A DNA stretch of 63,792 nucleotides, counting the filler, from Reticulomyxa filosa (Eukaryota > Protista > Foraminifera), in the NCBI GenBank assembly GCA_000512085.1. It is 13 parts of 13 records of this genome, joined end to end, with 100 filler letters (N's around TTAATTAATTAA, not from the genome) between each part and the next. Parts side by side here need not be neighbours in the genome. Positions count along the whole stretch, not along the records: positions 35,126 to 60,642 come from ASPP01047817.1; 12 more parts are not named here. The stretch is one strand, 5' to 3'. The number at the start of each line of letters is the position of its first letter. The stretch's first letter is position 1. The notes below the pieces were generated by a model. It saw only the letters and a list, made by a program, of their open reading frames with translations, ran no database searches and was not told the DNA's origin. Both the position numbers and the translations under genes were made by a program. Shown here piece after piece: positions 35,126 to 58,168 of this stretch.

Positions 35126-38100
35126 GAGAGAGAGAGAGAGCCCAAAATCAAAAAGTGAAATATAGTTGAGAGTGCTCTCATACAAAACTCGATGCAATCA
35201 CTCTTGTCAGTAGCCATATGATGAGTCAGCAAAATCAAGTTGACGAATAATCCCGCGACGCGAATGGATATTTCATTAAAATCCCTGCACTTGTTTTCTA
35301 CGGCGCCTTCCATGATGACATAGCCCTGAGGTGCGAGCAAGTCAGGTCGATATTCGGTCTTTCCCTCAGTGGCGCCATAGTCATCCGCGACAATGCGTCC
35401 ATCGGCCTGTACTTTGCCTAATCGCCGATTACCCGTGGCTGCTACGTGGCCGCCGGCGCCTTTCTTGTTTCCAATATCATGTCCACAAGTGGGACACTTG
35501 GCGCTTTCATTAGTGGCGGTGCAATTGGCCACGAAGTACAAATGGTTGTTGGGACACAACCAGGCACCTAGTCCGGCCATGACCTGCAACAGCGATGCAC
35601 TTTGATCCTCTGGCATTGCTACCAAATACTGGTTTGTGAATGTCTTGGGGTTGTGGAACAAAATACTGAAGGGTGACTGTGGTAAAGACAATACAGTGCC
35701 AAGGAAATGCCAAGCCAAGCGATAAAGCTGAATATTCTCTGTGAGAGCTGGTGTTTTTATTGCATGTTTAAACACTCCGCATTCGCAGTCGCCAATAGCC
35801 AATCTTTTACAAAAAACCAAAAATGTTTCGAGCGATTGAAAAAAAGGAGGCACATAAAACAAAAGAAAGACAAATCAACTGTGAGAGCAAGTATTTAACA
35901 CGGTCGTGACATCGCTCTGGATTTTCTAATTTGTCAGGGAGATATTTGATTATCGGCCCAAAGAAGTTTTTGGTCATGTCATAACGATCGAAAGGAGGAC
36001 TGTTTATGTATAACTCATTGAACACACCTATGTGATAATGATTGTAAATACATACACACGTGTCGACAATTGCATCCTTGGCAATGTTTTGTTGAGAGTG
36101 GTTTTGAAAAGAACAAAGGAACAGTTGACAAAAAACCTGCAATGAAATGGATAATATAGCGTCGTTCAAACCATGGCCAATTGAAATTCTTGGACTGAAG
36201 TGCTGCTGCAAATACTTGTTGCATATCGTTGTATTTTTCATCGAGTTTTTGATCTTGACAGTGCTCTAACAAGCGGAAGGCGTTGTCAGAAGGCGCATTG
36301 GGAATACGTGGAACATTGTCCGCCTTTTCTACTTGCATTGCAAAACCAAAGAGATGTTTGAATCTTTTGCTGTTCAAATGCAGCGCCGCGCGTGATCCTT
36401 TGCGTTTCCACAGCTCAGTCATCAAATAATATCCTAACCCTTGGCGAATTTTGCGTTCTTTATCGGTCATTTGCGCTTTCTGAGAAAGGTCGTACAATTG
36501 TCCAATGCTGGCGCAATCTTGTGGTGACAAGTACACTTTTAAACCCTTTTTCGTCCCTTGTATCCACATTTCTTTAATACCGTCGTCTCGATACGCGTAA
36601 GGAAATTCCATTGTCCAACTCAAGTAGTGTGACAAGTAATATGTCCACATCTTGCACTCCGCGACCAATAGCAACACTTCCAGCAAAACTCCATTTCGTA
36701 TTTTTTCGCTCAGTGATTGTGACAATCGCACAAATCTGCCAACGTCCGGCTTGTCTTGCGTTTCTAAACGTTTGCGCGAAGTGATTTCTTGGAAGTGCAA
36801 ATATTGTTCTTGGGCGCGAATTAAAAGAACAGCAAACTCGCCATTCAAATCACTTCCTTCGACATGGTTCACTAAAAAGTTTCGAACATTCTGATGTTCG
36901 TTCTGTGTGTCCCCCAAGTGGCAGAGAGTTGGATTTTGTTTTGTTCCTAACATACAAATAAAAATGTAACGCAACTCTTCGAATCAATGTAACCAATTGG
37001 GTTGCGATTTCCATTTTTGTAAACATGGTCGGCTTCAAAGTAAAGTCTGTATCTTTGCCAAGCAACCACTCCACAATCTTTTCGGCAAATTCGTCGTCAA
37101 TGATGTATCTCGTATCGGGGGCGACAATCGATGTCCTCAATCCGAATGTGTTGACGTAATTTTGTACAAACCATTGCAGCATTTCCTGTTTACCCTCCGC
37201 TTTGAGGTCCGTTCGACCCAACATACCCTCAATATGGTCCACCAAGTACTTTAGTGATAGGAAATTATCAAAGCGACATTGGGCAAATCTCGTTTTAATG
37301 ATATCGACAAACTTGTTGCTTTGAATTTGGTAATTGGTCGTCGTAAGACACAACATACATAATTTCAATTGATCCCATTGTTGATTCACCATTTGGAATA
37401 CATTTTGATCACGACAGCCTTTTCGCAACCATTGAACGATATTCTCAAATGCCTGTGATATCGAAACGAGTCGATCGAGATTGTGTTTCATTTTGTCGCC
37501 AGAAATATTTTGCCAAGACTTTTCAATTAGCTCTAGTACGACAATCAGTATTTTGCCCACGCATTCGTGTAGGCTTGCTTTCTCGTCCCAGACTGTGAAT
37601 AGTCGATGAAGGCCAAATCAACATCAATCACACACATACACATAATATTGGATATGCACATATACATATATGTATATATTGTATATCTCCAACAAGTGTA
37701 CATTACCTTTGATGACTTTCTCCAAATCCTTGGCAGAGTGATCTTGCAAAACGGATAAGACGTCGACAAAGTGAGACAAGAGCTGTTCGTGTGACCACAA
37801 AATGGCATACATTTCGGTGACTTGAAATTGGATATCTTCGGGCTCTGCTTCAGCTTCGGCATTTTTGACCTCTTCTTCGTCGACGAGCTCTTCCTTTTTC
37901 TCTTCGACAGGCAATTCGATTTGGGATCCTGTCTTTGGAGTGTCGGTTTTGGCAGCCGCGGCGGCGCGTTGTTCGATTTCGTCCATGAGTGCATACTGTC
38001 CCCACAAATTGTCATCATCTTCTTCTTCATTGTCGTTGTCACTGTCTACGTTATCGACAGCCACGTTTACGGGTCGCGTCGTTGCTGTCTTCGGATCGAG

Positions 38101-41100
38101 CTCTTGTTTTTTTTCCTCGTATTGTCCTCTTTCTCTTCTTGCTGTTTATCTTTGGGAATGGAGAAGTCTCGCTTGGTTTCCTTGGACGCACCGAATTTCT
38201 GCAAGGCTTCCATTGATGCTTTTTCGACAAACAGACACACGTGATTGACCAGCGTGTTGTATACGTGGGCGTCCTTCGAAAAGCGACGTAAGCCCAAGGT
38301 GCCACTGCTTTCCAAAAGCACGACGTCGTGCAGTAGTCGTTTGATGAGGTCCATCGACAATCGGTTCAAACTGATCTTCAATCCCGACGTCTGGATCGAC
38401 GTGTGTATCTGAACAATCAGAAACTCCACCAAACTTTCGCGGATGTCCTGTTTCATCCGCTCGTATACCTCGAAGCACACCTCGCGAAAAGAGGATACAA
38501 AGGCGTGCAGATGCGAGCTGAATGGGAAGCGGCCTCCTCCTGGAATGTCGTCCTTGGGAACAATCTCGTGGTTGTGTTCTCGATGCTCCCTTTGCGTAAC
38601 GCGAACGATTTTTGGCTCACTCAAAATACGCAAAAACAAATTGTCGATTCGTTCGTCCTTTTGTCTTCTGTAAAGCAAGGAATTGCCGTTTTCGAAAATG
38701 ACGCACAGAATTTCCACCAACAGATTCTTAATCTTCTGTGCCAAATTCGACATAAACTCGCTGCGAAGTGATCCCCTTTCGCGCAATTGCTGCTTCAACA
38801 CTGTTTTCAGACAGTATGTCGCTCCCGTCTCCGTGTCTAATAGCACATCTTGCAGTCGACCATTCAACACTTCTTGCAATTCGCCATTGTCGGGAGGATC
38901 GGCATTCAAGTAGGTGCGCAGAGTATGGATTTCGTCACAGAATTCGGTTTGGTTTCTTCGGCCGAAATTGATAAAGTTTAACGCCAACTCGTACGAGTCT
39001 GCCAATAACTTGAAGCTGTTAGGCTCGATTCGCTTTTGGATTTGCGTCAGAGACTGCGGCTCGAAGACATTGATGTCGTTGATCTGGACCTCGTTCAGAC
39101 TATTTGCCGGCAAAAGGGCATCGACAAACACATGCTTCCATAGACTATTGAATACCAAGGGATTGGTCAATACTGGGTCTTGTCCTTTTGAGGGACTGGC
39201 CACGCGATTGGAATAAAACAACATTACAAACGTGCGTTTCGGTCGAATGGCTTTCGTCTCATTGCTGCTTTTCTGATTCGCGACAAATGCCTTTTCCACG
39301 AGGTATTGCACGTGCAGGTAGTGCATCAACATGCTTTCACTCATCAGCGGATCGCATGCGATAACAAGCACACTGTGCTTCAACACGCAAGATACGTCGC
39401 GCAAAAAGTCGAATACGTACGTAAATAAATCTGTTTCTTGTACAAAGTCGCGCAAGTCTTTGAAGCGGATTTCGGTGAGTTCCGTGGTTTGGGACACCTG
39501 CTTCGTGTCTTTGGTCAGACGCGTGCAGATTGTTGTTAGGTCTTCCACTGACTTTGGAATATAAGAACTGTTCAATAGGTCATCTCTGGTTATCACATAT
39601 GCCTCGTTACCCTTCCGCAGTACATGTGTGTCCAGCAATTGAAAGTCGTGCGTCACCACTTTGATTAGTACTTGTTCGTTCTTTTCGTTCGCGCCTTCTC
39701 TTTCCAATACGTCCAACTTCGATGTGTCATCCAAAAAAAAAAACATGTACAATATGTATGTGTATGTCGGATTAAAAATATATATATGTATACACATATA
39801 TAAAGATAAGGTTAATACAATGTCGGCATATGGAATAAAGTCACGTTGTCGCTTTTTATCGTCAATCAAAATTTGCAGTGACGTGTTTTGCAACAACATC
39901 CTCAAACAGTTTTGAACAATTTGGTCAATTTGCACTTCTTGTGCCGCTTCTTCATTGTCAGTGTCATATTTCTTTTCTTCATTGGACTCGTTCTTCCTCG
40001 AGGTGGCCTCGTTGATCAATAAACTAATGTACGTATACCTTTCCAGAAATCCAACAAACAACGCGCTTTTTTTAAGTTGCAGACGATCGCTGAATCGAAT
40101 GGCAATGGTTTTTTGCAATTTGTCGAATTTGCTTTTCCACAAAGGATCCAAGCTGTATTGTTCCAACAGACTCGGATCCAAGAAAAACTTTTCAAAGCGA
40201 TTCAGGAACGCGACAGGGGTATGCAGATCGTGGTTTTTGGTTTCGTGAAACGCTTCTGCTCTGGACACGACCACCACACATCGGAATGTCTTGGCAATTC
40301 GACATCGAATGGATTCTCCTCCAATGCAAATGCGACAAAACTTTTGTCCATCGACCGATTGATACCTCTGATTGAGGATGTCATAAAGTGAATCGTATAA
40401 TTGCTCCAATTTCAATAACACACATATCTTGCCCGTGCTCATTGCGTTCCTTACTTTTTCAATGGTTCGATATAAATAAATGGTGGAATTGATATCTCCT
40501 GCAAATTTGCTGCCAAATATTACTTCGGTGGACTCCATTGTGGTGATGCCACTATCGAAAAGTATCTTCCACATCACCGGCGACTCGGTAATCAGCATGA
40601 TGTTGCGCATTTCGGGTCTCTTAATATCTCGCGACTGCTCGATGTTGTTGCGGATCAAATGCAAAGGCGAAAACTGCTTCCATATTATCTCCGGCTTTGG
40701 CAAGACATTGCCGTAAAAATACTTTGCGATTTTTGGGAATAAAAACTCTTCCGTTTGTTCTTTTGTCATCCCACCAAAGTTCCTCATCACGGCCTCGACC
40801 AGTAGCTCTCTGCTCACTCCACCACGCATCTGACAAGAGTACTTCAAGTAACTCGCCAGCGAATAAAAGTCCCTGTATCCGTAAAAGTCGAATTTGAACG
40901 GAGACATTTCGTGGTCTGTCATTATGCTGTTGTACAACTCTGCTATTTTTGGAACCTTTATCGACAAATCCTGTTGATAGTTTGCGTTTTCTCCTTCCAA
41001 CTTTTCGTTGATTATTTCGTCGGCCGTTGCCACCAGCTCCTTTGTGTCCGGTTGCATCACTTGGTGCAGTACCTTTCATTTGTTTTTTGTTTGCATTCGG

Positions 41101-44100
41101 ATATGTTGTGTGTTTATCTTCAAATCCAATGTGTGTATTGTCTTAACCATTCGATTCATCTTTGCCGAGTCCAATCTCCAGTTGCTCAAGCCAATGAATG
41201 CAATTTGTCGGTTGTCGTCTTCCAACAATTTGTGTAAGATTTTCAATGGTCTGTGTGGACCTAATGATCATCATTCGATTATTCGTTGTTTCATTGTTTG
41301 TTATTTATGACTTTTTTTATTAGAAAAAAAAAAAAAAGAAACTTTGTTCGGCTAATCCGACTTCATCCAGCCACAATACCACACTACGATTGCTTTTTGG
41401 TTGAGTCTTTTCCGCATCATTTTCCACCTTCTGTTCTTTTTCGTCTGTCCCGGATTGCTTCTTCGAAGGTATGGCTCTGTTTGTATTTGCACACAACGTA
41501 GTATCCACATTGGCCGAGAAAAAGAGAGAAAGAGAAAAACGCAACTTAAGTTTTTCTTGGAAACCAACAGCGTTTTCCCATCTTTTTCGAATTAAATCAG
41601 CAGTGGTCAATTTTGAGCATTGAAATGAAACCTAATACACATACGTGTAACAAATAGCATTGTTTGAACAAAACATAACAAAACACTGTGTGTTTGGTAT
41701 TTGCTACTTACGACAAAGAAATCATCAAAGTTCATTTCCGTGAGTCCCTTGCTTTTACTGGAAGATGACAGATTGCTTTGCACCACTGCCATGGCAAGTG
41801 TTTTGGAAGAACCTTTGTTTTCGTATTGTGTTCACAGCAGCCGTGTGTATGTGTGTGTGAGTGAGACAGACAAAAAAAAAGCAAAAAAAAAGAGGGGTTT
41901 ATACAAACCAGGACGCCCGACGACAATGGTTGGGGTCTTAGTCGCGAGTCCAACCAACATAACAAACAAGTTTTCACAAAAGGCACGGTTTTTGGCAATT
42001 CCAGGTGGAATATCTAATGTTCTCACGTATCTGTAAAAGGATATTGCAAACAGTTGTGTGCGAACGCAAAAGACAAAAAAAAAAATATCATGCCTTTGTT
42101 GTTCGTTTTCAACGACTACTCCAAATTGGATGTCTGTGTTAAGCTTTTTCAAAAGCTGTTCAACCAGGTTCTCATATTCTTTTCGTTGGCTCTTAGTTAA
42201 ACGATAATAGTAGCACTGTGCAAGAGATAAGATCATCGCTTCAATGACGCTCGTGCGTGTTTTTTTTCCTTCACGATTGTTGAAAAACCATAAGAACAGG
42301 GTATTGGCTCGACGCACGTCACGCAGTGAGCAAACACTCTGATCTTTTAATTTTTCTCTGTTCAAATCAATAAACATTTCAAAAACAAAAAAACGATTTA
42401 AAAAAAAAAAACAAACCTGACAAAATTTTGGGAAGTGAATATCGCATTAATGAAAAACAGTTTTAGGGAATCCAGCACTTTCGGTGTATTCTTCAGATCT
42501 TCAATGTTGTCAACAAACTCCTTTTTGGACCACGTGCTCGTGGTCATGACGGCAATATACTGCTGTTCGTCGTGTTGCGACAACGAGCCAAAGTTCCAAA
42601 CGTAGGTTTGCAACGACTTGGGCAAGGGGAAGACGCGATATACCAATTGACACATTTCTTTGTCCAAGTCATCCAAGTAGTGCTTGGTGACGTTCCTTTC
42701 CTCATCTTTTTCATCGGCGAGGTCTTCGTCCGTTTTGTGCCGAGTGCGATGTGGATTCAGTGCAGCGATAATGACGAGGTTGTCCGGAAACATCTGGCCT
42801 TTCAGACTGTGATCGCATACCACTTCTTTGAATGCTCCGATTTCAGGACTCGTGTTGATTTCATCCAAAAACACCAAATGGGTACGATTTGGATTGGTCT
42901 TTGCGCTCTCCAGAGGTGCCTCCAGATCTTTTTGCAAGTTTTCTACCGAGTAGCCTCCATGCACGTCGATCGATGTCATGGCAATGTTTAATGCACTGGC
43001 CATGAATTTCAATAGTTTGGTTTTTCCGCATCCCTTTTATATATACACATACATACATACAAATGTATATACATATATATTATATATGTATATACATTTT
43101 CGCAAAGTGCAAAGTGAAAACTGTTTCGCCCATGATCAAGACAGGTATTGCCGATTTGATTCGGAAAAATATGGAAACGATTTTCAAAATGTTATCAAAG
43201 GTCAGTGCGTAATCACTGTGTTCTGCCAGTATGTCTGACACTTGTTTGGTTCTCAATTTCTCGTCCTCGGATCTGTTGCACACATACACACACATATACA
43301 TGTATATAAGAATGATTCACTTTGATAATATATTTTTTTTGCTGAAGAGCAGAAATGGCCTATTGAACTTAAATCCACCGCAAATTTGCAACAGCAGATG
43401 CAACTTTTTGGCTTGATCGGTCATGTCTTCTTGATAAACTCCAACCTGCTTCACCGAATTTTGCTTTTTGATCAAGTCTTCCTCAAAGTTGTACAAATCC
43501 CATTTGTAGAGCCGACGGAGCAGCCTCCACTCTTGCGCGTGCGCATGGAGATTTTTGTCCAGATTCATCGACAGCAGCGACAAGGAGTTGTCCATTTGGG
43601 TGAGCTGCAGATCTTGCACAAGCGTGGTTTTGTGCATGTGCACTTGGATGGACTCGGAGATGGGGATCTGATTTAAGAGAACCATGGGAGGATCGGCCTT
43701 TTTCCACACTTTGACCAGGAAGAACTCTTCGTCGCCTCTGGACTCGTCGACCACATACTTTTCGTCTTCGTCGGCCTTGTCTTCGTCCAAGCGCTGATAC
43801 ATGTCACATGCGATATGTTCCCGGATTGCGCCAGCGAGCTGACGATCATTTCGTGCAAAGGGACAATGTGCAGTGGACTGTGACTGTGATGGGGACGTTT
43901 TCGTTTTTGATGTAAGGAAGTTGTACACCTGGACCAATTGTCGATACATGAATTGCAGGAACGACTTCAATTGAACCAGACTGTGTTCCGCTCTTGGAGC
44001 ATACTTATTGATTAACTGCAACATTCGAGCTCGGTCGATCTGGGGATGAGTTGTGTACGTCCAATCGTCTTTGGGGTTTTGCGTGTTCTTCAGTTGTCCC

Positions 44101-47100
44101 TTGTCCAACGCATCCAAATACTGCAACACAAAGTGTTCCTTCGGAGAAAGCTGCAATTCGTTTTTAAGGAACTGCGCAAACTTTGGTCTGACGTCTCGCA
44201 ATTCGTCGAACACTTCTGTCGACGGAATTGCAAGCTCTTTGATACGATCTCCGAAGAAATAAAACCATTTAAACACGTCCTCCAAACGGGTCTTCTTGTG
44301 AGTGGTCGACAGCTGCGTCGGCAATTCGACTAAAAACGCGTGGTTCTTGCGAACGCTGAAGCTCTCTCCGTTGCTTTTCGTGAGATAGCGCAGCACCAAC
44401 AGTTGGAACATCATCGTATTTACGTCCTTGCCTGCCTGTGTCGATATGTTAATGTGAAACACCATGAGGTCGTCCGTGACAGGGGCACTCGCGAAGCGAT
44501 CCACGACAAAGTCGGTGTCCAGAACAGGAGTGTTGATCGGAATGTGAACAAAGTGTCCTTCCTTCAATTGTAAACTTTTCACCATCTCCGTGATCACGTG
44601 GGATTTACCGACGCACTCATTTTGCGAAAAAAACACGGTCACAAAGGGCGCTTTGTTCTTTTTCTCGCGAAACGCTTTCAGGTCGCCACATAACACGTCC
44701 GAATAAAACGACTTGCTCTCTTCTTGCTGCAATATCGGCGACTCAATCTCGCGGAATGCGGACAAGGCCTGCGCCACCAAGCATTGGCCGTCTGTGGTAA
44801 TAATTGCCAACAGCGAGGTCTGGTTATGCATATACATCGGGAGAATTCGAACCAAACCCTGTTGAATGGAACGAGTTAACAGCTCGGGCAAAACGAGACA
44901 ATGCAATAGATTGCGTCCTGACTCCCTCGAACTTTTGTAACAACTGCGAATTAGAAAACATTCCAATTGCTCGATAGATGTCAAGTGGTCACAAAAGATC
45001 ACCTAAATTATGTATTGTTGCATTGTGATATACTGTAATTAAATATATAATATATATTTATATTTATATTTATATTTATATTTATATTTATATTTATATT
45101 TATATTTATATTTATATTTATATGTAATGCACGTAACTCGACTGGCAGTTGGCCGCTGTCCCTGCAACAAGTACAATTTGACCACATGGGACAAGACTTG
45201 GGTGTCTTTGCAAAAATATATGTGCGGCTGTCCACTGTGCAAAATATTTCCATGCTGTCTCCACTGAAGAGCGAAGCACTTTCGTCAAGTTGCTTTGAAA
45301 ATAACTCAAAGCCTCTCCGAGTTGACTCAATATGTCGCCATCCCAATTCCAATTCTTTCATTAAAGGAAGATCACACAAACAGTTATTCTGCGCATTGTT
45401 GATGTATGACAAGAGAGCAGAGACAAACATCTTTTCTTTAAACTGTTTTGGAGCCAATGGCGTTTTCAATGTCGGCAATAGTGATATCGGGATGAATGAA
45501 CGAAATTTTGGAAGCAATGGCTCCCAGATAGTTGCTCTTATCGGCGCTTTGAACGTACAGACGAAGATGATCACATAAATAGCGCATATCATTGATGGTA
45601 TAAAATAACAAAACGGGATATTTTTGTCGAAGCTGTTATAACGAAATGTATACGTGTGATGCAATATATAATGTTGAAGGATGAGAAGACAGATAAAGCC
45701 TAAAAGAAAATACCTTAGTAACGGTGGTTTTCCACGATTCGAGACATTCCTTCCAATAGCGATCAAGTTTTTCAAAGTCGTCTGCATTCCGCGATAAGTC
45801 AATGACTCGATCTTTGTTCAATTCGTCGCGTCCGCCAAGGGCATAATACTGCAATCTCTTTTTTGCGATGCTTTTGCATTTGTCGAATTTCGGAATGAAA
45901 TCGTTTTTCACTTTTTCTTTGAGCATTTCGAAATGAACGATTTTAATAATTTCGGATACAACTTGTTCTCGATTGATGGTAAGATCGACATTCTGTCCCA
46001 AGATCAGATCACCCAACTCTCGCGTAGATTTTTTCAAGTGTTCGGAAAGTACTTTGCCGGTGACATTGTGAGATCGCAGACGAGTGAGAATGAGATTGAG
46101 AGTCTCCACGTTGACTGACGAGAGTTGCTTTCGACGCGAGCGAAGCAGATTCTCGACGTCTTCGCGAGTCAAAGCGCTGAGTCCTCTTTGCGAAGTGAGC
46201 ACATCGCTCTCCACGGCGCCCGAGTCTCCTGTCATGTACATCAATAGTCTGTCCGTCAGTTGTTCGAATTCGTCCTGCGTCAAATCAATATGCGTTGCAG
46301 TTGCGTCGAGTGCAGTGGTGTTTTGATACTGAATACCCATGTACTTTTCTCGGTCGGGTCTGCTTTCGTCGGTGAAACAGACAGTACGAATTTTCTCCAA
46401 TTGGTCCTTGTCTGTCTGATGCAGCCATCCCTGCGGATCAATGGCATCGCGGATGAGTGACTCCCACGAGGATCGAACCACATTGAGACACTCCAACTTA
46501 TCCGCGTCAATATCGTGTTGCGATATCTGCAGCAGACGTCTTTCCATCGTCGATATGTCCTCATACTCGCCATTCAGAAAGCCGACAACGAACGTGCGCA
46601 CCTGCATCAGACTGGTGCTCCGCGAATGTTGCACCGGATCGTTTTCCGTAAAGTTTTGCATGTGTTCGTTGAACACGTTGTCGTTTTGGAACGTGGTGTG
46701 ACACTCCTTGATGATCTTGCTGCTGCTCACCAGCAGACGAAGCCATTCAATCGAAACGGTGGGAATGTCCGGGAATTGATCCTGATGATCCAACCAAAAT
46801 TGTTGAATTTTGGCCATTGGTGCAGTTTCCTTATCAAAGGATTTGAGCAATTGCTTTTCGGTCTCCCATCTGTCGTCATTCCATCCGTCCTGCTTGTTAC
46901 GCTTGTACAGCAAACCAAATGTCGTTGTCACGTCTCGCAACAATTTCAATGCCTCTTCGCGACGGAAGCACTCAAATACTTGACTCAAGGCCGTTGCCTG
47001 CGTTTGATACATTTCCATTTTTCGTAAGCAAAAGTCTGTGTTCTTCAACACTATCCTTTGTGCCACAAATATTACCCACGACTCTTTGCTCTTTGAGATT

Positions 47101-50100
47101 TGACACTTGTCCACTATATCCGACCATTGTATCTCTCTCACCGCAACTGTCGTCTTGTCGCTTTGATTGGCGATTCGCACAATTTCCTTTTTAATCGCTC
47201 CAATCAGCACGTATTCGCTCAATGCGCCCGTCCCATTCAGCAGTAGCGGCATTTTCATATCCAGTCCTTTGCACAATCGTCGCAATGCGTCCACCAGTTT
47301 GCTGTCCGATTCACCCTCCTTTGGCTTTGGCACTGTCATTGTCGACAGCTCCTTCAGCTCTGTCTCGGACAGGGCGATAGTATCCGAGAATCGTGTATGC
47401 GGTTCATACATTAGACGAATCTGTTTCTCGATTTCCTCCACTGACTTTTTGCGCAGCAGGCCAAAGTCGGTGGCAATACGTCGGCCGTTCACGTTGCGTT
47501 CTTTCAGTTCTTGTTTGGCTGATTCCCATTTCGCTTTGATATTTTTGAAGAGTTCTCGAAGAGTGGTAAGATGGAATTGACGTTGGGTGGGTGGGAATTT
47601 CAGCAGTATTTCTGCCAATTTTGTTTTCTATTGTTACGAGTAATGTTGTGAAAATATACACATATATATGTACATATATACGTATATATATATGTATGTA
47701 TATGTATATATTATATTATGTAATAGTTTAACTTTTTCTTGAACGCAATTCCACAGACACAAAGTGACTTTTTTTTCAGCCTCGGAAATGGTGTTTGCAG
47801 ATTGCCCGGGATACAATGCATTCAACAAACTCTCCACATTCCAACCCGTACTGTCCATCTTGATTCCATCGATTTCCTGCTCAAAGAACTTGTGGACGTA
47901 CTTTTCCAAATCAAATTGTTCCAAGTCTCTGGTCAGAGTGCTCTCTTGTTCTCTGATCCAGTTGCACAGCGCATAGGTGTCATACGACGACAGTGGTCTG
48001 AGACTCCATTGAATTTCATACTCTTCTACCACCGTCCTCCACATCGATAACGAAATATCGGACGCTTGGATTTTCTCAAAAGCTTCGAATATGGCTTTGG
48101 CCTCGTTGAAGGCCGACCAATCCATTTGGAGTGCAGCCTGCAGAGCTATTTCATCCCAGCCATGGGCCGTGGTCATTTTCATGCTCAGTTCATGCAATTG
48201 TTGTAGTTCGTTGCCAAACCACGCTTGTCGAATGCTGGAATTGGCGAAAAAGTTTTGCAACAATTCGCGATTCGATTTGATTTTGCCAAACTTTGCCATT
48301 AAACTGCGGACGCTTTTGATATCGATTGCCGTACCCGTTTTTTCGTCGGAGTTACTCGTGTCGTTCCACAGTTCGAGGAGCATTTCCAATTTTTCATCGC
48401 TTACGAGCATTTCCATCACCGCCACGCTCACTGTTTCCTTTGTTATTTGTTCGCACAAATGCACAAGCCACAAGCAATAGGACTCGAATACTTCCGATTT
48501 TACTTGTTTTCTTATCTGGCCCAAAAACCTGATGTTTGTGTGATGTGTGTCATACTTTATATAAATATACATATATATGTATATTTATATATGTTGTATG
48601 TATATATGTTTGTATGTATTGAATACTAAACCGCAACAATTGCAATCCTTCCTCCGAGGTCACGTAGTTAGCAATCTCATTCAGGTCTTTGATGTGAGAT
48701 GAAAATGGATGAAACCCATCCAACAACTGATCCAGTAGTCGACTCACTACCTTCCATTGCGACTCTGTCTTCATCCACGACCTCACTACGTTTATACACT
48801 CCACACGTTCGCCCGCGTCCAATGCCATGTAACTGCCTCTCAAAAACTTGGTTGTCCATTTTTTGTGTGATTGTCGCAATGATCTTCTCTTTCACTGTTC
48901 ATACACAATCGGATAATATGTGGACTGTAATCAGTTGCTCAAAAACCAAACACCAAAATAAAACAAAACAGTTGTAGGGCATTTGCTCCGTGGACAGGAG
49001 TTTCACTTTGTTGATAAACAGTTGGTCCAGATACTTGGACAATGGCTCGTTCGACGATTGGAATATGGCTTGGAATGTCTCCCAGTGCAAGTTGTACTTG
49101 ATAATATTCTCAACGCTTTCTGCAAACCCATACTTTGATAGCCAGCATCCAAAGATACGTTTCAACAGCATTTGTGTTTCTGAGATTGGATATTGGACCT
49201 GTGTGACATTTTAAAATATACCAAATGAAAACAACAAAGACAAAAACAAAGACAGAGCCAACGATCTATGAACTTGGATTGACTCCAAATAAAATGGGAT
49301 AAATCGAGTATCGGCGAGTAGAAATGGACTCTCTAAAATGAACATTCGGGCCATTCGACCTAACACTGGGAAGTCTCGGAGTAGTTTAAGTAGACAGTCG
49401 GATTCATTGACTGTGGCAATTCGTTTGATCAAGTCTCCCATTATTCGCTTGTCCAAAAGTGAAAGTAGCTTTTCATTGAGTTTGTTATCCGCGCTGGTCC
49501 GTTGTACCAATTGTTGCACTATTCCAACTGCTAATTCGCACGGCAAGTTTTGTACAAACTGCGAAAAATCGTATTTGAAATTTTCCAATAAAACAAGTAG
49601 CCGATCACGAAAACTGGGTAAATACTTTTCCATTGTGTCGAACACTGGTTGAGTGTTTTTGTCATCAAAAACAAATGCATATATGTATACATATATATTT
49701 ATATTTTTTAGACAACGTACGTTGAAGCATCAAATCGTGCTTTGTGGTACTGTTTGTTGCAGAAACGTCTCGCAAAAGACTTCCAAAAAAATACTCTTCC
49801 ATAGGGAATGGTCGCTGAGGCAGATTTACAAGTCGCAATTCGATTTCCACCAATCCCAACACATTTTCCTGCTGCTTCGTCATCGAGTTCAACTTTTCTT
49901 TGAAGGCGCGCACATGCGTATCCTTGTTTTTGTTTAGCGCGCAGATGCTAAATAAATTGTACCACATCAAACTGAGAAGAACTTCCTTTATGTCAGTTTT
50001 CTTTGCAATTTTGTCGACCAAAGAGATTTGAATGCTGTCCAAATGGTCCAAAGTCATTGCTTTCAAATTATTGATCACTGTCTGTAAGAAGTAAATATGT

Positions 50101-52778
50101 TTTTGATTTTCAAGTAATATTGGATATGTATGTATGTGCATGTATGTGTATCATTTTACAGTATAACACACCAATATATCTCCAATGTGTTCATTGCCTA
50201 GGAAATTATAAAAAAGAAACAAATGTTCGTACTGCACGTCAGCTGATAACATCCAAAGCACACACATTCCAAAAATTAAGCGAGCAATTTGATCCCATGA
50301 TATTACCTTTTCATGCATTACGGCTTTGAAATTGCTTAAAACAAAGGTTGCTATTTTCTGGCGCAATGCCTGAAAGTCGACTTTGTAACAACGGTTTTCT
50401 TTTTGAGTGCTACAAGTCAGCCAAAACCTTTTCATGATTTGTAGAGACGTATTCACCGAGATCGTGTCGTTTATTCGAAGATACAGCCACACCAAAATGG
50501 TGACTGCGTATTTTACGTACTGTTCATGAGGGATCGAACGTATCATTCCTTTTTCCGTGACATCATGCACGATAGCCCTACAAGGAATAGTGATATCGAC
50601 CTTCTCATGCTCTCGCTTTGCTGTTTCGATCACGTATGAGACTTTGCTCTTTTTTTTTTGAATTTCACTTAAATTCCATACGCAATGGTACACAGAAACG
50701 TCTTCTCCGATTTTTTCGAACATTAGACCTTTTTTTTTTATTTATTGCCATTGTTTTTGCAGATAGAACATATCACAAGTCATATATATACACACACATA
50801 TATGTATATGTAAAAACTGGAGCTATTGGCAACACTGGGACGCAAAGAATAGTCATCGTCCTTGCCCGACAGCAGGATAACGTGACACAATGAGTTGGGC
50901 TCGGCCAGGATGGATTCTTCACTGGTGACTTCGAGCACGTCGCTTGGCGGGGACGTGTATCTTTTATCTCCCCAGCTGCACACACTCTGCACAAACAGCG
51001 AGCGACGATCTCTATCGATTGAAGACAGCAGATTACAGACGCTATTGATATCAGTCCAATCGGAACAGGACGATGGATCTCTGTCGCGCCCCCACGCGAT
51101 TTGGTAAGAGATAAATCCGATCGCTTGATATGGGGAATGCCAACACATCCATTTCTTGGAATTGTCCCGGAACACACGCACATGCGTAGGAGCAGACGGT
51201 TCAAAGTGTTTCGTCGAATCCTGTACTTCGACAGATGGGGTCATAAACACGACGGGCCACGTTTCTTTAGTCTGTTCCTTGTCCATGTTCTCTTTTTCGC
51301 GTATAGCGGAGATGGTGATAAAGTACTCCGTGTCGGGGACCAAATCATCGGACATCCACTCAGACTCATAGGTGGTGCCAATGACTTGGCCGTAATGGTG
51401 GTTGTACTCGCGAATCAGATACTTTATATTCTTGTTTTTTGGGTCCTGGGCGAAGCGAGCTGGCCACCACTGCAGTTTCGCGGACATTGGCAGGACCTCT
51501 AAAAGTTGGGGGAAAATAGGACGACAAGGAAGCACAGACAACGAGAGCATCTCTTCGAACGTCTTATGTGTACGAACACGCAATGGCTCTGTCCACAGCG
51601 ATTGCTCCATATCTTGCTTTTGTTCTAGATTGTTAAGCATTCGCCATTCAAAACATGTTTGCAGTGATATATCGTACACACAATTTTCTTTCAAATTATC
51701 CAACACTGCATAACGCTTCTTGTTTGATACTTTCCATGTCATCTTTCGCTCTTCTTTTTCATCTGTATTCGTCGCACTCTCTTTTGTATCTTCGCCACTC
51801 CAATCTCCAGATGCGTTTGCATTTGTCCTTGTATTTGTTTTTTTATTGGTTGAATTACTTTTGCTATTGCTATTGCTATTGCTATTGCTATTACTATTGC
51901 GATTATTATTGCCATTGTTTTTACTGTTGACTTCGGATGCATTCGACGATTTCAAATCTTGCTCTTTTGCACAAACCTCAAACCACCACATACTCTGCTC
52001 GTTCAATCCATGTGCACGGAGTTGATCCATGTTATACTTACTCATTTTCTGCTTGATCCATCCTGTGGACACATCCTCCACACTCCAGTTTATTATTATT
52101 TGATTCACTTCCACTCCAACAATCCTCGTTTGGATTGGGATGCACGTCACTGTTGTTTTTTTTTTTAATTAAAATAAAAAAAAAAAGGGTCACTTGGGAT
52201 CGACGTAGAATCTCCCTTTCCACTCTATTTTTTCCTTTTCCTTACGCTTACCCAGTCTTTTGATAAGGAATTCTTTGAGGAAGGACTGTGACGATAAATT
52301 CGATGAATCGCTGTCATTTGTATCTGTAGAGCTTGAGGACTTCTCTGAATCTTCAAACTCCGTTTGCAATGTGTCGTCGTCCACGATCTCGACATCCGAA
52401 GAACAGTTGCTCAAGATTTGATGTGCGTCTTTAAAAGACACCATCAACCATTTCACATTCTTCGAGTAATCGTCATCCATTATTCCTGGAATCTCTTCTT
52501 TGAACTTTTTTTTTATTTGATCAACCAAATCTTTATATTTCATTTCTTTTATTGTTTCGCTTGTTAATTTTGAAAATGTTATATCCTTGTAGCTGCACTC
52601 CTTTTTATAAGTGTGCTCTCCGTTGTCTACATATACTCGCAGAGTCACTTTCCCTTCGCCTAATCACAATACATATCACCGTATGTTGTTTTTTAAATTT
52701 AACCGACAAAATGTTCAAAGCAAAAATCAAGTATATACAATGTTATTGAACTACTTTTATCAGACCTGTGTCACTCAT
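35126..52778 (-). CDS. RNF213: Giant RNF213/mysterin-like dynein-related AAA+ ATPase / RZ-type E3 ubiquitin ligase, many exons, 3'-truncated by the contig end
   Basis: RNF213-family motifs appear in the expected order: GQPHIYFC...IFCDHLTSIEQLECFLIRS; SQNECVGKS; DYALTFDNILKI...PVLIMGET|GCGKT; VFLDEINT; IIAALNPHR; QLVYRVFPLPKSLQTYVWNFGSL; SVCSLRDVRR; IAKNRAFCENLF...VVGRPG|SSKTLAM; LDEVGLAE; GLSNWRLDSAKMNR; FYGYRDFYSL; MRNFGG; IFGSKF; AMSTGKICVLLKLEQLYDSLYDILNQRY; FLNRFEK; RFPFS; RZ finger CPNNHLYFVANC...CPTC. The first three introns (from 52765, 52251-52150, 50817-50729) join in frame from ATG 52778. Confidence 0.93.
45055..45123 (+). repeat. (TATATT)n intronic microsatellite
   Basis: About 11 perfect copies inside an intron of the RNF213-like gene. 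Confidence 0.95.
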
Positions 52779-54109: not shown

Positions 54110-57100
54110 TTATTCGGTAGCATTGAGAATTGTGATAAGAGGATTTTCACCCAACCAATCAGTGGATTTCACTTTTCCTAATTTATCCAATCGATCCAAT
54201 ACTTTTTTCAACTCGCTATGTAGCAAATGCTATTTGAAAGCAATGTCCAATACATGCAGTCAGTAAAAATGTCAAAATACAAACGTACCAAAAACAGATA
54301 GAACAAAAAAAAAACAAACTTTAGTGTTTTCAGGTAAATCTTTGTTGTATTTGTTCAGTAAAGTCATAAATTTGATAGTGCGGTCTTGGTGATTTCTCAG
54401 AATCTCCAAAACCAAATTCGATTGCTTTTGTAAATCTAATTCTTCTGCCATAGATCTTCCAACATTGAGTCTGTCTAGATCAATGGCCCCAGTTTTTGGA
54501 TCTGTGGCAGCAGCTAACGTGGCGACTTTGTGCAAGCGAACGGCTTCCTCGACGTCATCCTCTGTCACAGACGAAGAATGTCGCATCCTGGCCAAAGCTT
54601 CGCTGATGCGAATCAACGACTCCAACTGGCGAGGAGTGGCGGTAATTGTCTTTCGTCCATCCTGACGACCCATTCTTCGCATTTCACAGTACTTTTCTTG
54701 TAATCGGTGACATGCACGATCCGATAGCGTTGGATGTATTTCCCGACGACTGTAGGAAATGTAATCCATCAAGAGTTGCTGATCGATTAGGCCGGATTCG
54801 ACCTCTTCCTCTCGATTCTGTCATGTTTATTGTAAAGTTTGAAATGAACACAAATATAAGATAGGAAAAAAAAGAAGAGGGTAAACATAACTGCATAATA
54901 CAAAGACACAATGTGCTTTGCCAATTTTTTGTCAATCGCTTCATTTGGTCTGTCCAAAACCAAGTAAATCAAATCAAATCGACTCATTAAAGTCGGTGGC
55001 AAGTCAATATTTTCGACAATGGACTTGTTTGGATTGTATCGACTGTCGACGGGATTGGCCGCTGCCAAAATGCATGTGCGAGCATTCAACGTGCAAATGA
55101 TCCCTGCTTTTGCAATGCTTACTGTTTGTTGCTCCATCACCTCGTGCAATATGCTTCTGGCTGACTCACTCATTTTGTCAAACTCATCGATGCAACAAAT
55201 ACCACGATCACTCAACACGAGAGCACCAGACTCCAATACCAAGTCACGGCTGTCCGCGTCTTTGGTAATGTATGCTGTCAACCCGACCGCCGAGGATCCC
55301 TTTCCGCTCGTGTAAATGCCGCGAGGAGCAATCTTATGCACATACTGCAACAATTGGGACTTGCTTGTTCCAGGGTCCCCACACAACAGTACGTTCATTT
55401 GACTTCGAAAGCGGCCGCCCCCTCCAGCAGAAAAATCCTTGTCTGAGCTTCCAAACAACTGACACAAAACACCTTTTTTGACATCTTCCATTTCCCAAAT
55501 GGAAGGAGCCAAAGAGCGAACTAGCTTTTCGTAAATATTTGGGTCTCTTCCCAAGTCTTTCAACTGTCTAATGCGAGTCTCTCGTCGAGCTTCCGACTCG
55601 TCCAGCTCTTCAAACGTTGTAAAGCTGTCCGTGTCTTTTTGGCTTTTACTACTTTCCACTGTAAACTGGTTCGACTTACTTTTTTTCACATGCAACGCGT
55701 CCACATATGTTTTGTACACAGCCTGGATCTGTCGTCGTCGAGGATTGGCACGGATGGCTGCCTTTGGTGGAATATTTCAATCTTTTGATTAGGTCCACCT
55801 CACAGGGAACGAGGGAAAAAGCAAAATAAATAAATAAATAAATAAAATTTGAACTGCACGATAAACACCGGTTACTTCAATCCGGTCGCCAGGCTTGCAA
55901 ATGTCTACCAAGTTCTCGTACACGTAAACGTCAATGGTTTGCGGAGTTTCACCATCAGGGATGTGTTCTGGGGTCTCTTGCACCTTTACCAACTGCTTGT
56001 CTTGGAATTTGCATCGATTGTGTATCAATTCCATTGTGTTCCCACTCTTTTGTTTTTTTTTTTTTTTAAAAAAAAAATACAACGGAAAAAAATGAATGTG
56101 CAAATGTAGTGTTTCGTTTTTTTTTTTTTTTTTTTCCGCGGACTTTGTTTGCTCGTCATAGCAACAAACACTTGACAAAAAATCTATTTCTAACGCCTCT
56201 CAGCTCTCAATAGTTTTTGTTGTCAAAATGGACGGACCTGACAAGAGACGTTTGGACATTTGATGGGCTCTTCGATTCTGCCCGCTTCAATCATATTTTC
56301 CACTTCTGTGTGACACAACACACATCTGAAAAAAGCGGTTTGAATGTCTGGAATGGTCCCGGTGCAACGAATCACCATGCCTTGGACGGCAACTAGCTTG
56401 TCAATGTCGGACGGGTTCATGTTTCGCATTGATTTTACTTCGCGTAAATTGAAGGGTCGAATCCAAATGTCGACCTGATCTGTGTGCTCGTCGATTATTC
56501 TTTTGAAGTGGTCCTCTGTTCGTTTGTTTTGTTTTGTTTATTGGTTTGTTGATTTTTGAATTCAAACGTTGCTCATTTATTCTTTTGCTCAATCGACACC
56601 CCTTTTTTTTTATTCGAGTTGCTTAACCAGCATAAACGTTCACTTGCGAATCAAATGCAGGCACTACTTCAGATGGAAAATTGACAGTTTGATTGTACAA
56701 TTCTCGGTCAAAGTTGTAGACGTTGCTCATATCCAAATTTAAATTTGTCAGCTGAAATAATATTTTTTTGTATGTTGTGGTGTTCTTTGGTTGTCGTTCT
56801 TACTTTTTTTTTTCCGGACTTGTTCCCCTCTTTGTCATTTTTTTTTTTTTTTTTAAAAAAAAAGGACCGACGTAGGCATATTGATGCAATGGTTGTTGTT
56901 TTTTTTTCGACACAACAAAAACAAAGCGAATAAGTATAAATATATGCAAACTTGTGCTTCTAAACAGTCTTGAATTAGATCTGTGTACAATTTTTCTCCG
57001 TTTTTCTCAAATGCTGAAATAAAGCGACGAAATCGTTTGCTGACATCGTCAATGTTGATATTAGTTCCCCATATTGTACTTGCTGCTACTGGCTGGCTAT

Positions 57101-57408: not shown

Positions 57409-58168
57409 TTTTTATTTGAAATAAAGTTTCTGTTTATAAAGAAAAAAGTGGCAATTGGCGCCTCGAGAAAAGTTCAGTCAAAACTAAAAAAGAGCCTGTC
57501 TTCGCGAAACTGATTGACTAATTTAGCTTTCTTATTTTTGGCAAAAATAAACAAGATGGAAAATGCAAATTCAAAAGTCGCGTATTCCAAACAAAAGATA
57601 GAGACACAAAAAATAGTGGAGAAAAGTATTTGTAAATTAAGATTTAATTCTGTATCAAATATCACTCGGTGCTAATAATTCAAAAGTGTAATTTTGAAAG
57701 CTATGATTAGATTCTTTGTGAGCACAAGTATTCTGAAATTCATGACGAATCACAATCAGTTCACGTCGGTTACGTAATTCTGAAAAAGATCGTGATGTGT
57801 TTGATCTCGCTAGAGCCGAGTTGAATACTTAGCAGCTTTGATCTTTATCAATTTCTCAAGAAATAGTAGTGGAGTTATCATATTTCTTTAGATCGAAAGG
57901 TAAACAAAATTGATTTTGTTCGGAAATTGGCTGTGTAGCAAAAAAAATGTTGATTTCTTAAAATTAATGACTTTTTGTGTGCTGAAAATTATTTAAATTT
58001 TGATATTGAGCATTTAAAAAAAATTGAGTTAGTGCCTTTGATGAAGTAGTGATACTTTTAGAAGAAAAATGTCACCTTTAATTGACCTTTTTGGCAGGGG
58101 AAAAAAAGAAACCAAAATTGCGTTCCAACAGCCCTTTGTCAAAAATAAGAAAACCCCTATCCTTTTGA

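What the first reader, a model, noticed from the sequence alone, without database searches (positions are those of the whole stretch)
50560..52778. Unexpected N-terminal sensor module on the RNF213-like protein: PB1/ubiquitin-like domain + three FN3 repeats + CBM20-like sandwich
Seen: exon 1 MSDTG (52778-52766) splices to a domain (VTLRVYVD...YKDLVDQIKKKF...VEIVDDDTLQTEF) resembling a PB1/beta-grasp fold with an acidic OPCA-like motif. A phase-1 GTAAGC...CAG intron (52251-52150) leads to three FN3-like repeats (IIINWS...LDNLKENCVYDISL; AKLQWW...DDLVPDTEYFITISA; PSAPTHVRV...WHSP...SYQIAW). These continue via intron 50817-50729 into LMFEKIGEDVSVYHCVWNL...VSYVI...HDV, at the position where animal RNF213 has its CBM20-like domain. 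Established: FN3 and PB1 domains are not part of the vertebrate RNF213 architecture. Inference: this is a lineage-specific, swappable ligand-recognition or oligomerisation module. A PB1 domain could link it to p62/NBR1-type autophagy adaptors.
Basis: partly seen in the sequence, partly recalled or inferred. Interest (0 to 1): 0.8.

Follow-up and report, generated by a model that had tools for sequence, protein, structure and literature searches.

The report
FN3-array head on foraminiferal RNF213-like ligase
The 5' end of a giant RNF213-like ubiquitin-ligase gene from a Reticulomyxa-type foraminifer encodes three fibronectin type III domains behind a conserved ~100-residue domain of unknown fold; the proposed PB1 and CBM20 identities found no support.

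Summary
All three introns are GT..AG and frame-consistent. Annotated Reticulomyxa filosa paralogues run uninterrupted across both the exon 2/3 and exon 3/4 junctions.

Downstream ORFs on the same strand match the RNF213 AAA core (E 9e-27) and carry an RZ-type zinc finger (E 1.5e-14). The whole order, N-domain, FN3s, helical arm, AAA, is collinear with R. filosa paralogous loci. Linkage is therefore well supported genomically. No RNA run was listed, so there is no transcript proof.

The three FN3 domains are confirmed through paralogues:
- Pfam fn3 matches 11 of 15 family members.
- An AlphaFold model of a paralogue has pLDDT 86-96 for FN3-2 and FN3-3.
- Foldseek's top hits are three-FN3 arrays.

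The PB1/beta-grasp claim is not confirmed. There is no Pfam or PDB match, the models are low-confidence, and the "OPCA-like" acidic run lies after the domain. The CBM20-like claim has no support and its fold was not tested.

This is a lineage-specific, multi-paralogue N-terminal module whose copy number of the first domain varies (one or two). It diverges faster than the AAA core. I rate it a new variant of a known kind, of moderate interest.

The parts
52766..52778 (-). Putative exon 1 (start codon plus 4 codons, phase 1)
   Evidence: Read directly from the sequence. Paralogue products also begin with a short Met-led peptide just before the first strand. No cDNA is available.
52343..52659 (-). 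Conserved ~100-residue N-terminal domain of unknown fold (predicted beta-beta-alpha, then poorly predicted)
   Evidence: 36-50% identical to 9 copies in R. filosa paralogues (alignments A1 and A7). No Pfam or PDB match. AlphaFold pLDDT is 53 for the single sequence and 46-75 within the paralogue model.
52252..52342 (-). Acidic, Ser/Asp-rich linker at the end of exon 2.
   Evidence: Sequence and alignment A1. pLDDT is below 50 in both models.
51560..52141 (-). FN3-1, atypical: a helical insertion after strand B and a long low-complexity loop
   Evidence: The profile of 9 copies hits FN3 domains of IL-2R beta, neogenin, contactin and DCC (E 4e-4 and weaker). The paralogue model has pLDDT 53-84 with a helix at residues 283-296.
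51740..51958 (-). Asn/Ser-rich low-complexity insertion inside FN3-1, holding a coding hexanucleotide microsatellite (51861-51917)
   Evidence: period 6, 9.5 copies. The insertion is shorter or absent in paralogues.
51239..51535 (-). FN3-2, canonical
50924..51202 (-). FN3-3
   Evidence: Paralogue model pLDDT is 74-96. Tandem-FN3 alignments span model residues 361-562. Foldseek top hits are three-FN3 arrays over ~340 columns. Profile hits are weak: chitinase, EphA8 and neogenin FN3 at E 0.07-0.4.
50541..50911 (-). Beta-looking segment (~95 residues) that straddles intron 3 (50729-50817).
   Evidence: Alignment A5. No PDB profile hit, although human RNF213 chains were in the searched set. No Pfam hit. 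The Atlas ESMFold model of P0002 has pLDDT 0.52 and its matches are uninformative. The window copy lacks 13 residues that P0002, P0006 and P0013 have.
45639..50540 (-). Long helical N-arm/linker exons, contiguous with the module
   Evidence: Collinear with L001, L002/P0005 and L003. No detectable sequence similarity to the RNF213 N-arm.
38067..45002 (-). RNF213-like AAA core
   Evidence: phmmer against PDB finds only RNF213 chains, at E 8.7e-27 and 3.5e-6. A Walker A motif (GCGKT) lies at the start of ORF piece 43036-42401.
35422..35583 (-). RZ-type zinc finger, near the cut 3' end of the piece
   Evidence: Pfam PF20173, E 1.5e-14, 53.8 bits against a cut-off of 27.

Best explanation
**What it is.** Coordinates 50560-52778 are the 5' end of one very long minus-strand gene (52778 down to beyond 35126, cut by the edge of the piece). 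The gene encodes a cytosolic RNF213-like AAA+/RZ-finger ubiquitin ligase of a Reticulomyxa-type foraminifer.

**Domain order at the N-terminus (shown).**
- a family-specific ~100-residue alpha/beta domain of unknown fold
- an acidic Ser/Asp-rich linker
- three FN3 domains, the first with a helical insertion and a microsatellite-encoded Asn/Ser loop
- a ~95-residue beta-looking segment
- the helical arm leading to the AAA ring

**How it likely works (inferred).** The FN3 array and the first domain sit at the free tip of the N-arm, the region where human RNF213 has its disordered N-terminus and CBM20. There they probably act as the target-binding or self-association head of the ligase. Gene-family expansion, faster divergence of this head than of the AAA core, and one or two copies of the first domain would diversify specificity or valency.
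For: **Exon model**
- The frames and splice sites fit.
- The annotated R. filosa product P0018 runs N-domain to FN3-1 across the same junction.
- P0002 and P0006 run FN3-3 to the beta segment across the exon 3/4 junction.

**One gene**
- The window's ORF pieces 52663 to 41323 are collinear with L001 9033 to 20519 on one strand. The ORF pieces lie close together on the same strand, separated by short gaps.
- L002 and L003 are collinear too.
- P0005 (1808 aa) joins the FN3s to the helical arm.
- MCM4 lies upstream and bounds the 5' end.

**RNF213-like**.

**FN3**.

**Family-wide module**
- 14 R. filosa clusters match exon 3.
- Three more N-domain copies were found with the A1 profile.
- The first domain is duplicated in P0003 and in L002.

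**Faster divergence of the head** (window against L001)
- FN3 region 26% identity, N-domain 40%, arm 27-39%.
- AAA region 46-73%.
- This parallels positive selection in the N-terminal 1000 codons of simian RNF213 (PMC11549300).
Against: - There is no transcript evidence: no RNA run was listed.
- The 2014 R. filosa annotation splits the paralogous genes into several models. For example, P0003 ends 62 nt before the next model.
- The binding or self-association role is inference only. Faster divergence may simply reflect weaker constraint.
- The folds of the first domain and of the beta segment are unknown.
- The FN3 structural evidence comes from a paralogue about 33% identical to the window's exon 3, not from the window's own protein.
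Confidence: 0.7

Rival explanations
1. The first domain is a true PB1 or ubiquitin-like beta-grasp domain. It polymerises the ligase or docks it to p62/NBR1-type adaptors.
For: - The predicted secondary-structure order (beta-beta-alpha, weak beta, alpha, beta) is compatible with a beta-grasp.
- The language-model search listed plant PB1-like clusters at 0.87, below the 0.9 level at which such hits count.
- Loosely, the KW.LVSF..A...L stretch resembles the PB1 beta4-alpha2 pattern. This is my own reading, not a test.
Against: - No PB1, PB1-like or ubiquitin-family Pfam hit in any of 10 copies at E up to 10.
- No PDB hit for the profile.
- AlphaFold did not close a beta-grasp, either alone or with alignment.
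- The acidic run lies after the domain, not between beta3 and alpha2.
- The beta1 basic residue is E or D in 4 of 10 copies.
Confidence: 0.15
2. The beta segment after FN3-3 is the homologue of the CBM20 domain of animal RNF213. The foraminiferal protein would then have kept an ancestral glycan-binding domain and added the FN3s and the first domain in front of it.
For: - The segment sits directly before the helical arm, as CBM20 (aa 378-515) does in human RNF213 (PMC11549300).
- It is about the right size, ~95-110 residues with strand-like stretches.
- My rough count puts it ~1750 residues upstream of the first AAA match, against ~1460 in human.
Against: - No CBM20 Pfam hit.
- A profile of the segment finds nothing in PDB, although human RNF213 chains are there.
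- The Atlas model is of low confidence.
- The window copy lacks 13 residues that the paralogues have.
- The N-arm shows no sequence similarity to the RNF213 arm that could anchor the position.
Confidence: 0.2
3. The N-terminal exons belong to a separate small FN3 gene that merely lies upstream of the RNF213-like gene.
For: The R. filosa annotation calls P0003 as a separate 562-aa gene, followed 62 nt later by the next model. No cDNA is available.
Against: - Homology to the window continues past the annotated P0003 stop, to L001 10623.
- P0002, P0005, P0006 and P0013 continue from FN3-3 into the arm within one product.
- The same order is kept at three other loci.
- No stop-bounded intergenic gap exists in the window, and the exon 3/4 junction is in frame.
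Confidence: 0.07
4. The FN3 array is a passive spacer or scaffold extending the arm, with no ligand-recognition role.
For: FN3 arrays serve as rulers or scaffolds in intracellular proteins such as titin, twitchin and myomesin. These are among the best structural matches.
Against: - The array's position is at the free tip of the protein.
- One loop is expanded and microsatellite-encoded.
- Divergence between paralogues is strong.

None of these points is decisive.
Confidence: 0.25

Closest known systems
Vertebrate RNF213 (mysterin)
   Same: Giant cytosolic protein. The AAA core matches only RNF213 chains in PDB (E 9e-27). There is an RZ-type zinc finger near the C-terminus. A long helical arm precedes the AAA ring.
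   Different: - The N-terminus carries an orphan domain plus three FN3 domains. Human RNF213 has a disordered N-terminus and CBM20 there (PMC11549300).
- The arm has no detectable sequence similarity.
- No RING motif was found by pattern search in the ORF pieces.
- It belongs to a multi-copy, partly tandem gene family.
Reticulomyxa filosa hypothetical proteins ETO32080, ETN98897, ETO22969, ETO29274 and others (UniProt X6LA66, X6NB38 and X6NEQ8, auto-named 'Fibronectin type-III domain-containing protein')
   Same: Same module in the same order: first domain, three FN3s, beta segment, arm. Identity to the window is 25-50%.
   Different: - They are fragmentary gene models not linked to RNF213 in their annotation.
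- None is closer than 42% (exon 3) to 50% (first domain) to the window.
- Two loci have the first domain twice.
FN3-containing TRIM E3 ligases (C-I subfamily, e.g. MID1, TRIM9; from my own knowledge)
   Same: Cytosolic ubiquitin ligases that carry FN3 as a non-catalytic module.
   Different: A single FN3 placed between COS and SPRY, with RING/B-box catalysis and no AAA ring. There is no homology beyond the generic fold. This comparison was not tested here.
PB1 domains (p62, NBR1, aPKC, Par6)
   Same: Similar size and a possible beta-beta-alpha start.
   Different: No family match, no OPCA motif at the canonical place, no conserved beta1 lysine, and the fold was not reproduced.

Membership tests
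Fibronectin type III (PF00041) | Pfam fn3 profile match at or above the gathering score | tested here: met
   The window's FN3-2 scores 24.8 bits against a cut-off of 25, i.e. marginal. The homologous domain in paralogue P0002 scores 46.5 bits. 11 of 15 family members match, best E 1.7e-15.
Fibronectin type III (PF00041) | Seven-stranded beta-sandwich of ~90-100 residues superposing on solved FN3 domains | tested here: met
   Tested on paralogue P0003, about 33% identical to the window's exon 3.
- FN3-2 plus FN3-3 align to tandem FN3 pairs.
- Foldseek top hits are three-FN3 arrays, E 9e-12.
- FN3-1 has only moderate confidence (pLDDT 53-84).
- The window's own exon was not folded.
Fibronectin type III (PF00041) | Three separate repeats, each recognisable as FN3 | tested here: met
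   - FN3-1: profile hits to FN3s, E 4e-4.
- FN3-2: Pfam match and structure.
- FN3-3: structure with pLDDT 74-96, but only weak profile hits at E 0.07-0.4.
PB1 (PF00564 / PF26130) | Profile match to PB1 or PB1-like | tested here: not met
   No PB1 hit in 10 copies at E up to 10. No PDB hit for the profiles. The Atlas feature score of 0.87 is a lead only.
PB1 (PF00564 / PF26130) | Beta-grasp fold beta1-beta2-alpha1-beta3-beta4-alpha2-beta5 | tested here: inconclusive
PB1 (PF00564 / PF26130) | OPCA acidic motif between beta3 and alpha2 (type A), or an invariant Lys in beta1 (type B) | tested here: not met
   In alignment A7 the acidic run follows the last conserved strand. The beta1 position is R in 6 of 10 copies and E or D in 4.
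CBM20 (PF00686) | Profile match, or similarity to the RNF213 CBM20 (human aa 378-515) | tested here: not met
   No Pfam hit for exon 3, exon 4 or the paralogues. The profile of the segment finds no PDB chain, although human RNF213 chains were in the searched set.
CBM20 (PF00686) | Beta-sandwich fold with two aromatic sugar-binding sites | not tested
The segment straddles intron 3, so the window's copy has no single reference. The Atlas ESMFold model of P0002 has pLDDT 0.52 and its matches are uninformative.
RNF213-like E3 ligases | Dynein-like AAA core similar to RNF213 | tested here: met
   Only RNF213 chains are hit, at E 8.7e-27 and 3.5e-6.
RNF213-like E3 ligases | RZ-type zinc finger | tested here: met
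   PF20173, E 1.5e-14, at 35422-35583.
RNF213-like E3 ligases | RING finger in the E3 module | tested here: inconclusive
   No C3HC4-type pattern in minus-strand ORF pieces of 60 aa or more. Short exons were not examined, nor was the part beyond the cut at 35126.

The most novel reading that the evidence does not exclude
The ~100-residue first domain is a previously undescribed, possibly beta-grasp-like, self-association domain whose copy number (one or two) sets valency. Together with a rapidly diversifying FN3 array it would form the recognition head of an expanded family of RNF213-type coat-forming ligases in a giant syncytial protist. That would imply that RNF213-style cell-autonomous defence with variable N-terminal sensors predates animals.
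Probability: 0.12. Interest if true: 0.75.

Novelty: new variant of a known kind. Interest (0 to 1): 0.45.

Why it matters
How RNF213 recognises its very diverse targets is an open question, and attention has turned to its fast-evolving N-terminus (PMC11549300). A protist lineage has multiplied RNF213-like genes and placed a different module on the same end of the molecule: an FN3 array plus an orphan domain. This is a natural experiment suggesting that the N-terminal tip is the exchangeable specificity end of this ligase class. It also supplies a compact, foldable module (FN3-2 and FN3-3 are predicted with high confidence) that could be expressed to look for partners. Finally, it corrects the fragmentary R. 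filosa annotation, in which these pieces appear as unrelated hypothetical proteins.

Tried and rejected
- **Word-index search with exon 3.** It found nothing because candidates are length-limited. The exhaustive HMMER search then found the family.
- **RNA evidence.** No run was listed.
- **First domain, sequence searches.**
  - Pfam on 7 and then 10 copies gave nothing.
  - PDB profiles gave nothing.
- **First domain, structure and feature searches.**
  - The single-sequence AlphaFold model had pLDDT 53.
  - Atlas feature hits were 0.87-0.89, below the useful level.
- **Beta segment.**
  - The PDB profile found nothing.
  - Atlas structure neighbours of a low-confidence model reached TM 0.5 at most, to a glycosyltransferase. 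I reject this.
  - hhalign against the FN3-3 profile gave probability 0.3%, so it is not recognisably a fourth FN3.
  - hhalign is insensitive here: FN3-3 against FN3-1 gave only 1.3%.
- **Anchoring the arm to RNF213.** Neither phmmer nor a 5-sequence profile of 45639-47627 hit RNF213.
- **Species.**
  - The MCM4 fragment found no near-identical protein within the length window.
  - blastn against four R. filosa loci gave only 69-81% identity, and only in core exons.
  - The window is therefore either an unannotated R. filosa paralogue or a close relative; I could not tell which.
- **RING.** The pattern search found none.
- **Joined spliced protein.** Exons were searched one by one by reference, and natural paralogue proteins stood in where a domain crosses an intron.
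Full report
**1. What is in the sequence**

| Feature | Coordinates | Notes |
|---|---|---|
| Exon 1 | 52778-52766 | ATG plus 10 nt, ends in phase 1 |
| Intron 1 | 52765-52660 | starts GT, ends AG |
| Exon 2 | 52659-52252 | |
| Intron 2 | 52251-52150 | GTAAGC...ACAG, 102 nt, holds an in-frame stop |
| Exon 3 | 52149-50818 | |
| Intron 3 | 50817-50729 | GTTTTT...AAAG |
| Exon 4 | from 50728 | |

All junctions keep the frame. The acceptors of introns 2 and 3 share an A-rich tract before the AG.

A second in-frame donor exists at 50835 and would remove six residues.

Upstream, 54272-56178 (minus strand) is an MCM4 gene. The N-terminus therefore cannot extend much further 5'.

**2. What gene it belongs to**

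- ORFs further down the same strand match only RNF213 among all PDB sequences. ORF 38067-41060 scores E 8.7e-27 and ORF 43317-45002 scores E 3.5e-6.
- ORF 35128-35862 carries a Pfam RZ-type zinc finger, E 1.5e-14.
- A pattern search found no RING. I regard that as inconclusive.
- The piece ends at 35126, so the C-terminus is cut off.

**3. Relatives**

The exhaustive HMMER search with exon 3 against 1.84 billion representatives gave 15 hits.

- Fourteen are hypothetical proteins of the foraminifer Reticulomyxa filosa.
- The fifteenth is a generic FN3 protein, myomesin-3-like.
- The best hit is 42% identical, so these are paralogues or orthologues in a close relative, not the window's own product.
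- A profile of the first domain found three more R. filosa copies.
- I could not fix the species of the window.

**4. Linkage of the N-terminal exons to the core**

No RNA run was listed for this stretch, so linkage rests on comparative evidence.

- The window's ORF pieces from 52663 to 41323 align in order and on one strand to R. filosa contig ASPP01010330 (L001 9033 to 20519). The order is first domain, FN3s, arm, AAA.
- L002 and L003 show the same order.
- P0005 (1808 aa) joins the FN3s to the arm in one product.
- The old annotation splits these genes. P0003 ends 62 nt before the next model, but homology runs on past that stop.

I take a single gene as well supported (about 0.9), though not proven by transcript.

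**5. The FN3 repeats**

- Pfam fn3 scores 24.8 bits (cut-off 25) on the window's second repeat. It scores 46.5 bits on paralogue P0002, and 11 of 15 family members match.
- A profile of the first repeat hits FN3 domains of IL-2R beta, neogenin, contactin and DCC, from E 4e-4.
- The third repeat gives only weak FN3/Ig hits.
- I folded paralogue P0003 with a 19-row alignment that includes the window's exons as separate rows.
  - FN3-2 and FN3-3 have pLDDT 74-96.
  - FN3-1 has pLDDT 53-84, with a helix inserted after strand B.
- Foldseek's best matches are three-FN3 arrays (neogenin, fibronectin 12-14, contactin FN1-3) over about 340 columns, E down to 9e-12.
- In the window, FN3-1 carries a ~70-residue Asn/Ser-rich loop encoded partly by a hexanucleotide microsatellite.

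Three FN3 domains are thus confirmed, by homology to a modelled paralogue.

**6. The first domain**

- It is a real, conserved domain: 36-50% identity among ten copies, with five invariant positions.
- Nothing identifies it as PB1 or ubiquitin-like.
  - Pfam gave no such hit at E up to 10.
  - PDB profiles gave no hit.
  - In the alignment-based model only a beta-hairpin and one helix reach pLDDT 46-75 in either copy.
- The Atlas feature search listed plant PB1-like clusters at 0.87, which is only a lead.
The beta1 basic residue is not conserved.
- I put a beta-grasp-type fold at roughly 0.4 and a true PB1 at about 0.15.

**7. The 'CBM20-like' segment**

- Between FN3-3 and the first long helices lie ~95-110 residues with strand-like stretches. 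The segment straddles intron 3.
- Pfam finds nothing.
- The profile finds no PDB chain, although human RNF213 chains were in the searched set.
- hhalign does not relate it to FN3.
- The Atlas model is of low confidence.
- The positional analogy to human CBM20 (aa 378-515, just before the stalk; PMC11549300) is reasonable. It cannot be anchored, because the arm shows no sequence similarity to RNF213.

**8. Family features**

- The first domain occurs twice in tandem in P0003 and at the P0005 locus.
- On L004 the RZ-finger 3' end of one paralogue is followed by a degenerate N-terminal fragment of another, which indicates tandem arrays.
- Between the window and L001, identity is 26% in the FN3 region, 40% in the first domain and 27-39% in the arm. 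It is 46-73% in the AAA region.

**9. Interpretation**

- Shown: the domain order, the FN3 identity, membership in an expanded R. filosa family, and collinearity with an RNF213-like core.
- Inferred: the module is the binding or self-association head at the free end of the arm, and the paralogues diversify it.
- The parallel with positive selection in the primate RNF213 N-terminus (PMC11549300) is suggestive only.
- There is no signal peptide-like start, so the FN3s are presumably cytosolic, as in titin or FN3-bearing TRIM ligases (my own knowledge).

**10. Verdict**

- This is a new variant of a known kind. UniProt already auto-labels three of the fragment entries as FN3-containing, but nothing I found links them to RNF213: the source names are 'hypothetical' or FN3-only, and a paper search for RNF213 with Reticulomyxa found none.
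- Interest is moderate.

Noticed in passing
window 54272-56178 (-): An MCM4 replication-licensing gene lies directly upstream of the RNF213-like gene. Best matches are 60-82% identical eukaryotic MCM4 fragments, and no near-identical protein appeared in the length-limited search.
   Followed up: partly
window 58751-60342 (-): ORFs that look by eye like an RRM domain, followed by Arg/Asp/Ser-rich repeats, resembling an SR-type splicing factor. Next to them, 58078-58683 is a Glu/Lys/Thr-rich low-complexity ORF.
   Followed up: no
window 51861-51917: A coding hexanucleotide microsatellite (period 6, 9.5 copies) gives an Asn-Ser run inside a loop of FN3-1. It is a likely site of length polymorphism.
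   Followed up: partly
L001 (P0003) and L002:9064-9838: Two R. filosa paralogues carry the ~100-residue first domain twice in tandem. The window and most other copies have it once.
   Followed up: yes
L004:38-5374: The RZ-finger 3' end of one RNF213-like paralogue is followed about 1.4 kb downstream of its annotated end by a rearranged fragment. The fragment runs from the start of the first domain to the end of FN3-1 and then jumps to arm sequence. This suggests tandem arrays with decaying copies.
   Followed up: partly
window 50541-50726 (-): The window's copy of the beta segment lacks 13 residues that are present in paralogues P0002, P0006 and P0013, all within one exon.
   Followed up: no
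window 35810-38145 (-): No RING-type Cys/His pattern was seen between the AAA core and the RZ finger. This ligase may rely on the RZ finger alone.
   Followed up: partly
window 50835 / 50817: Two in-frame GT donors lie 18 nt apart for intron 3. They are possible alternative 5' splice sites differing by six residues.
   Followed up: partly
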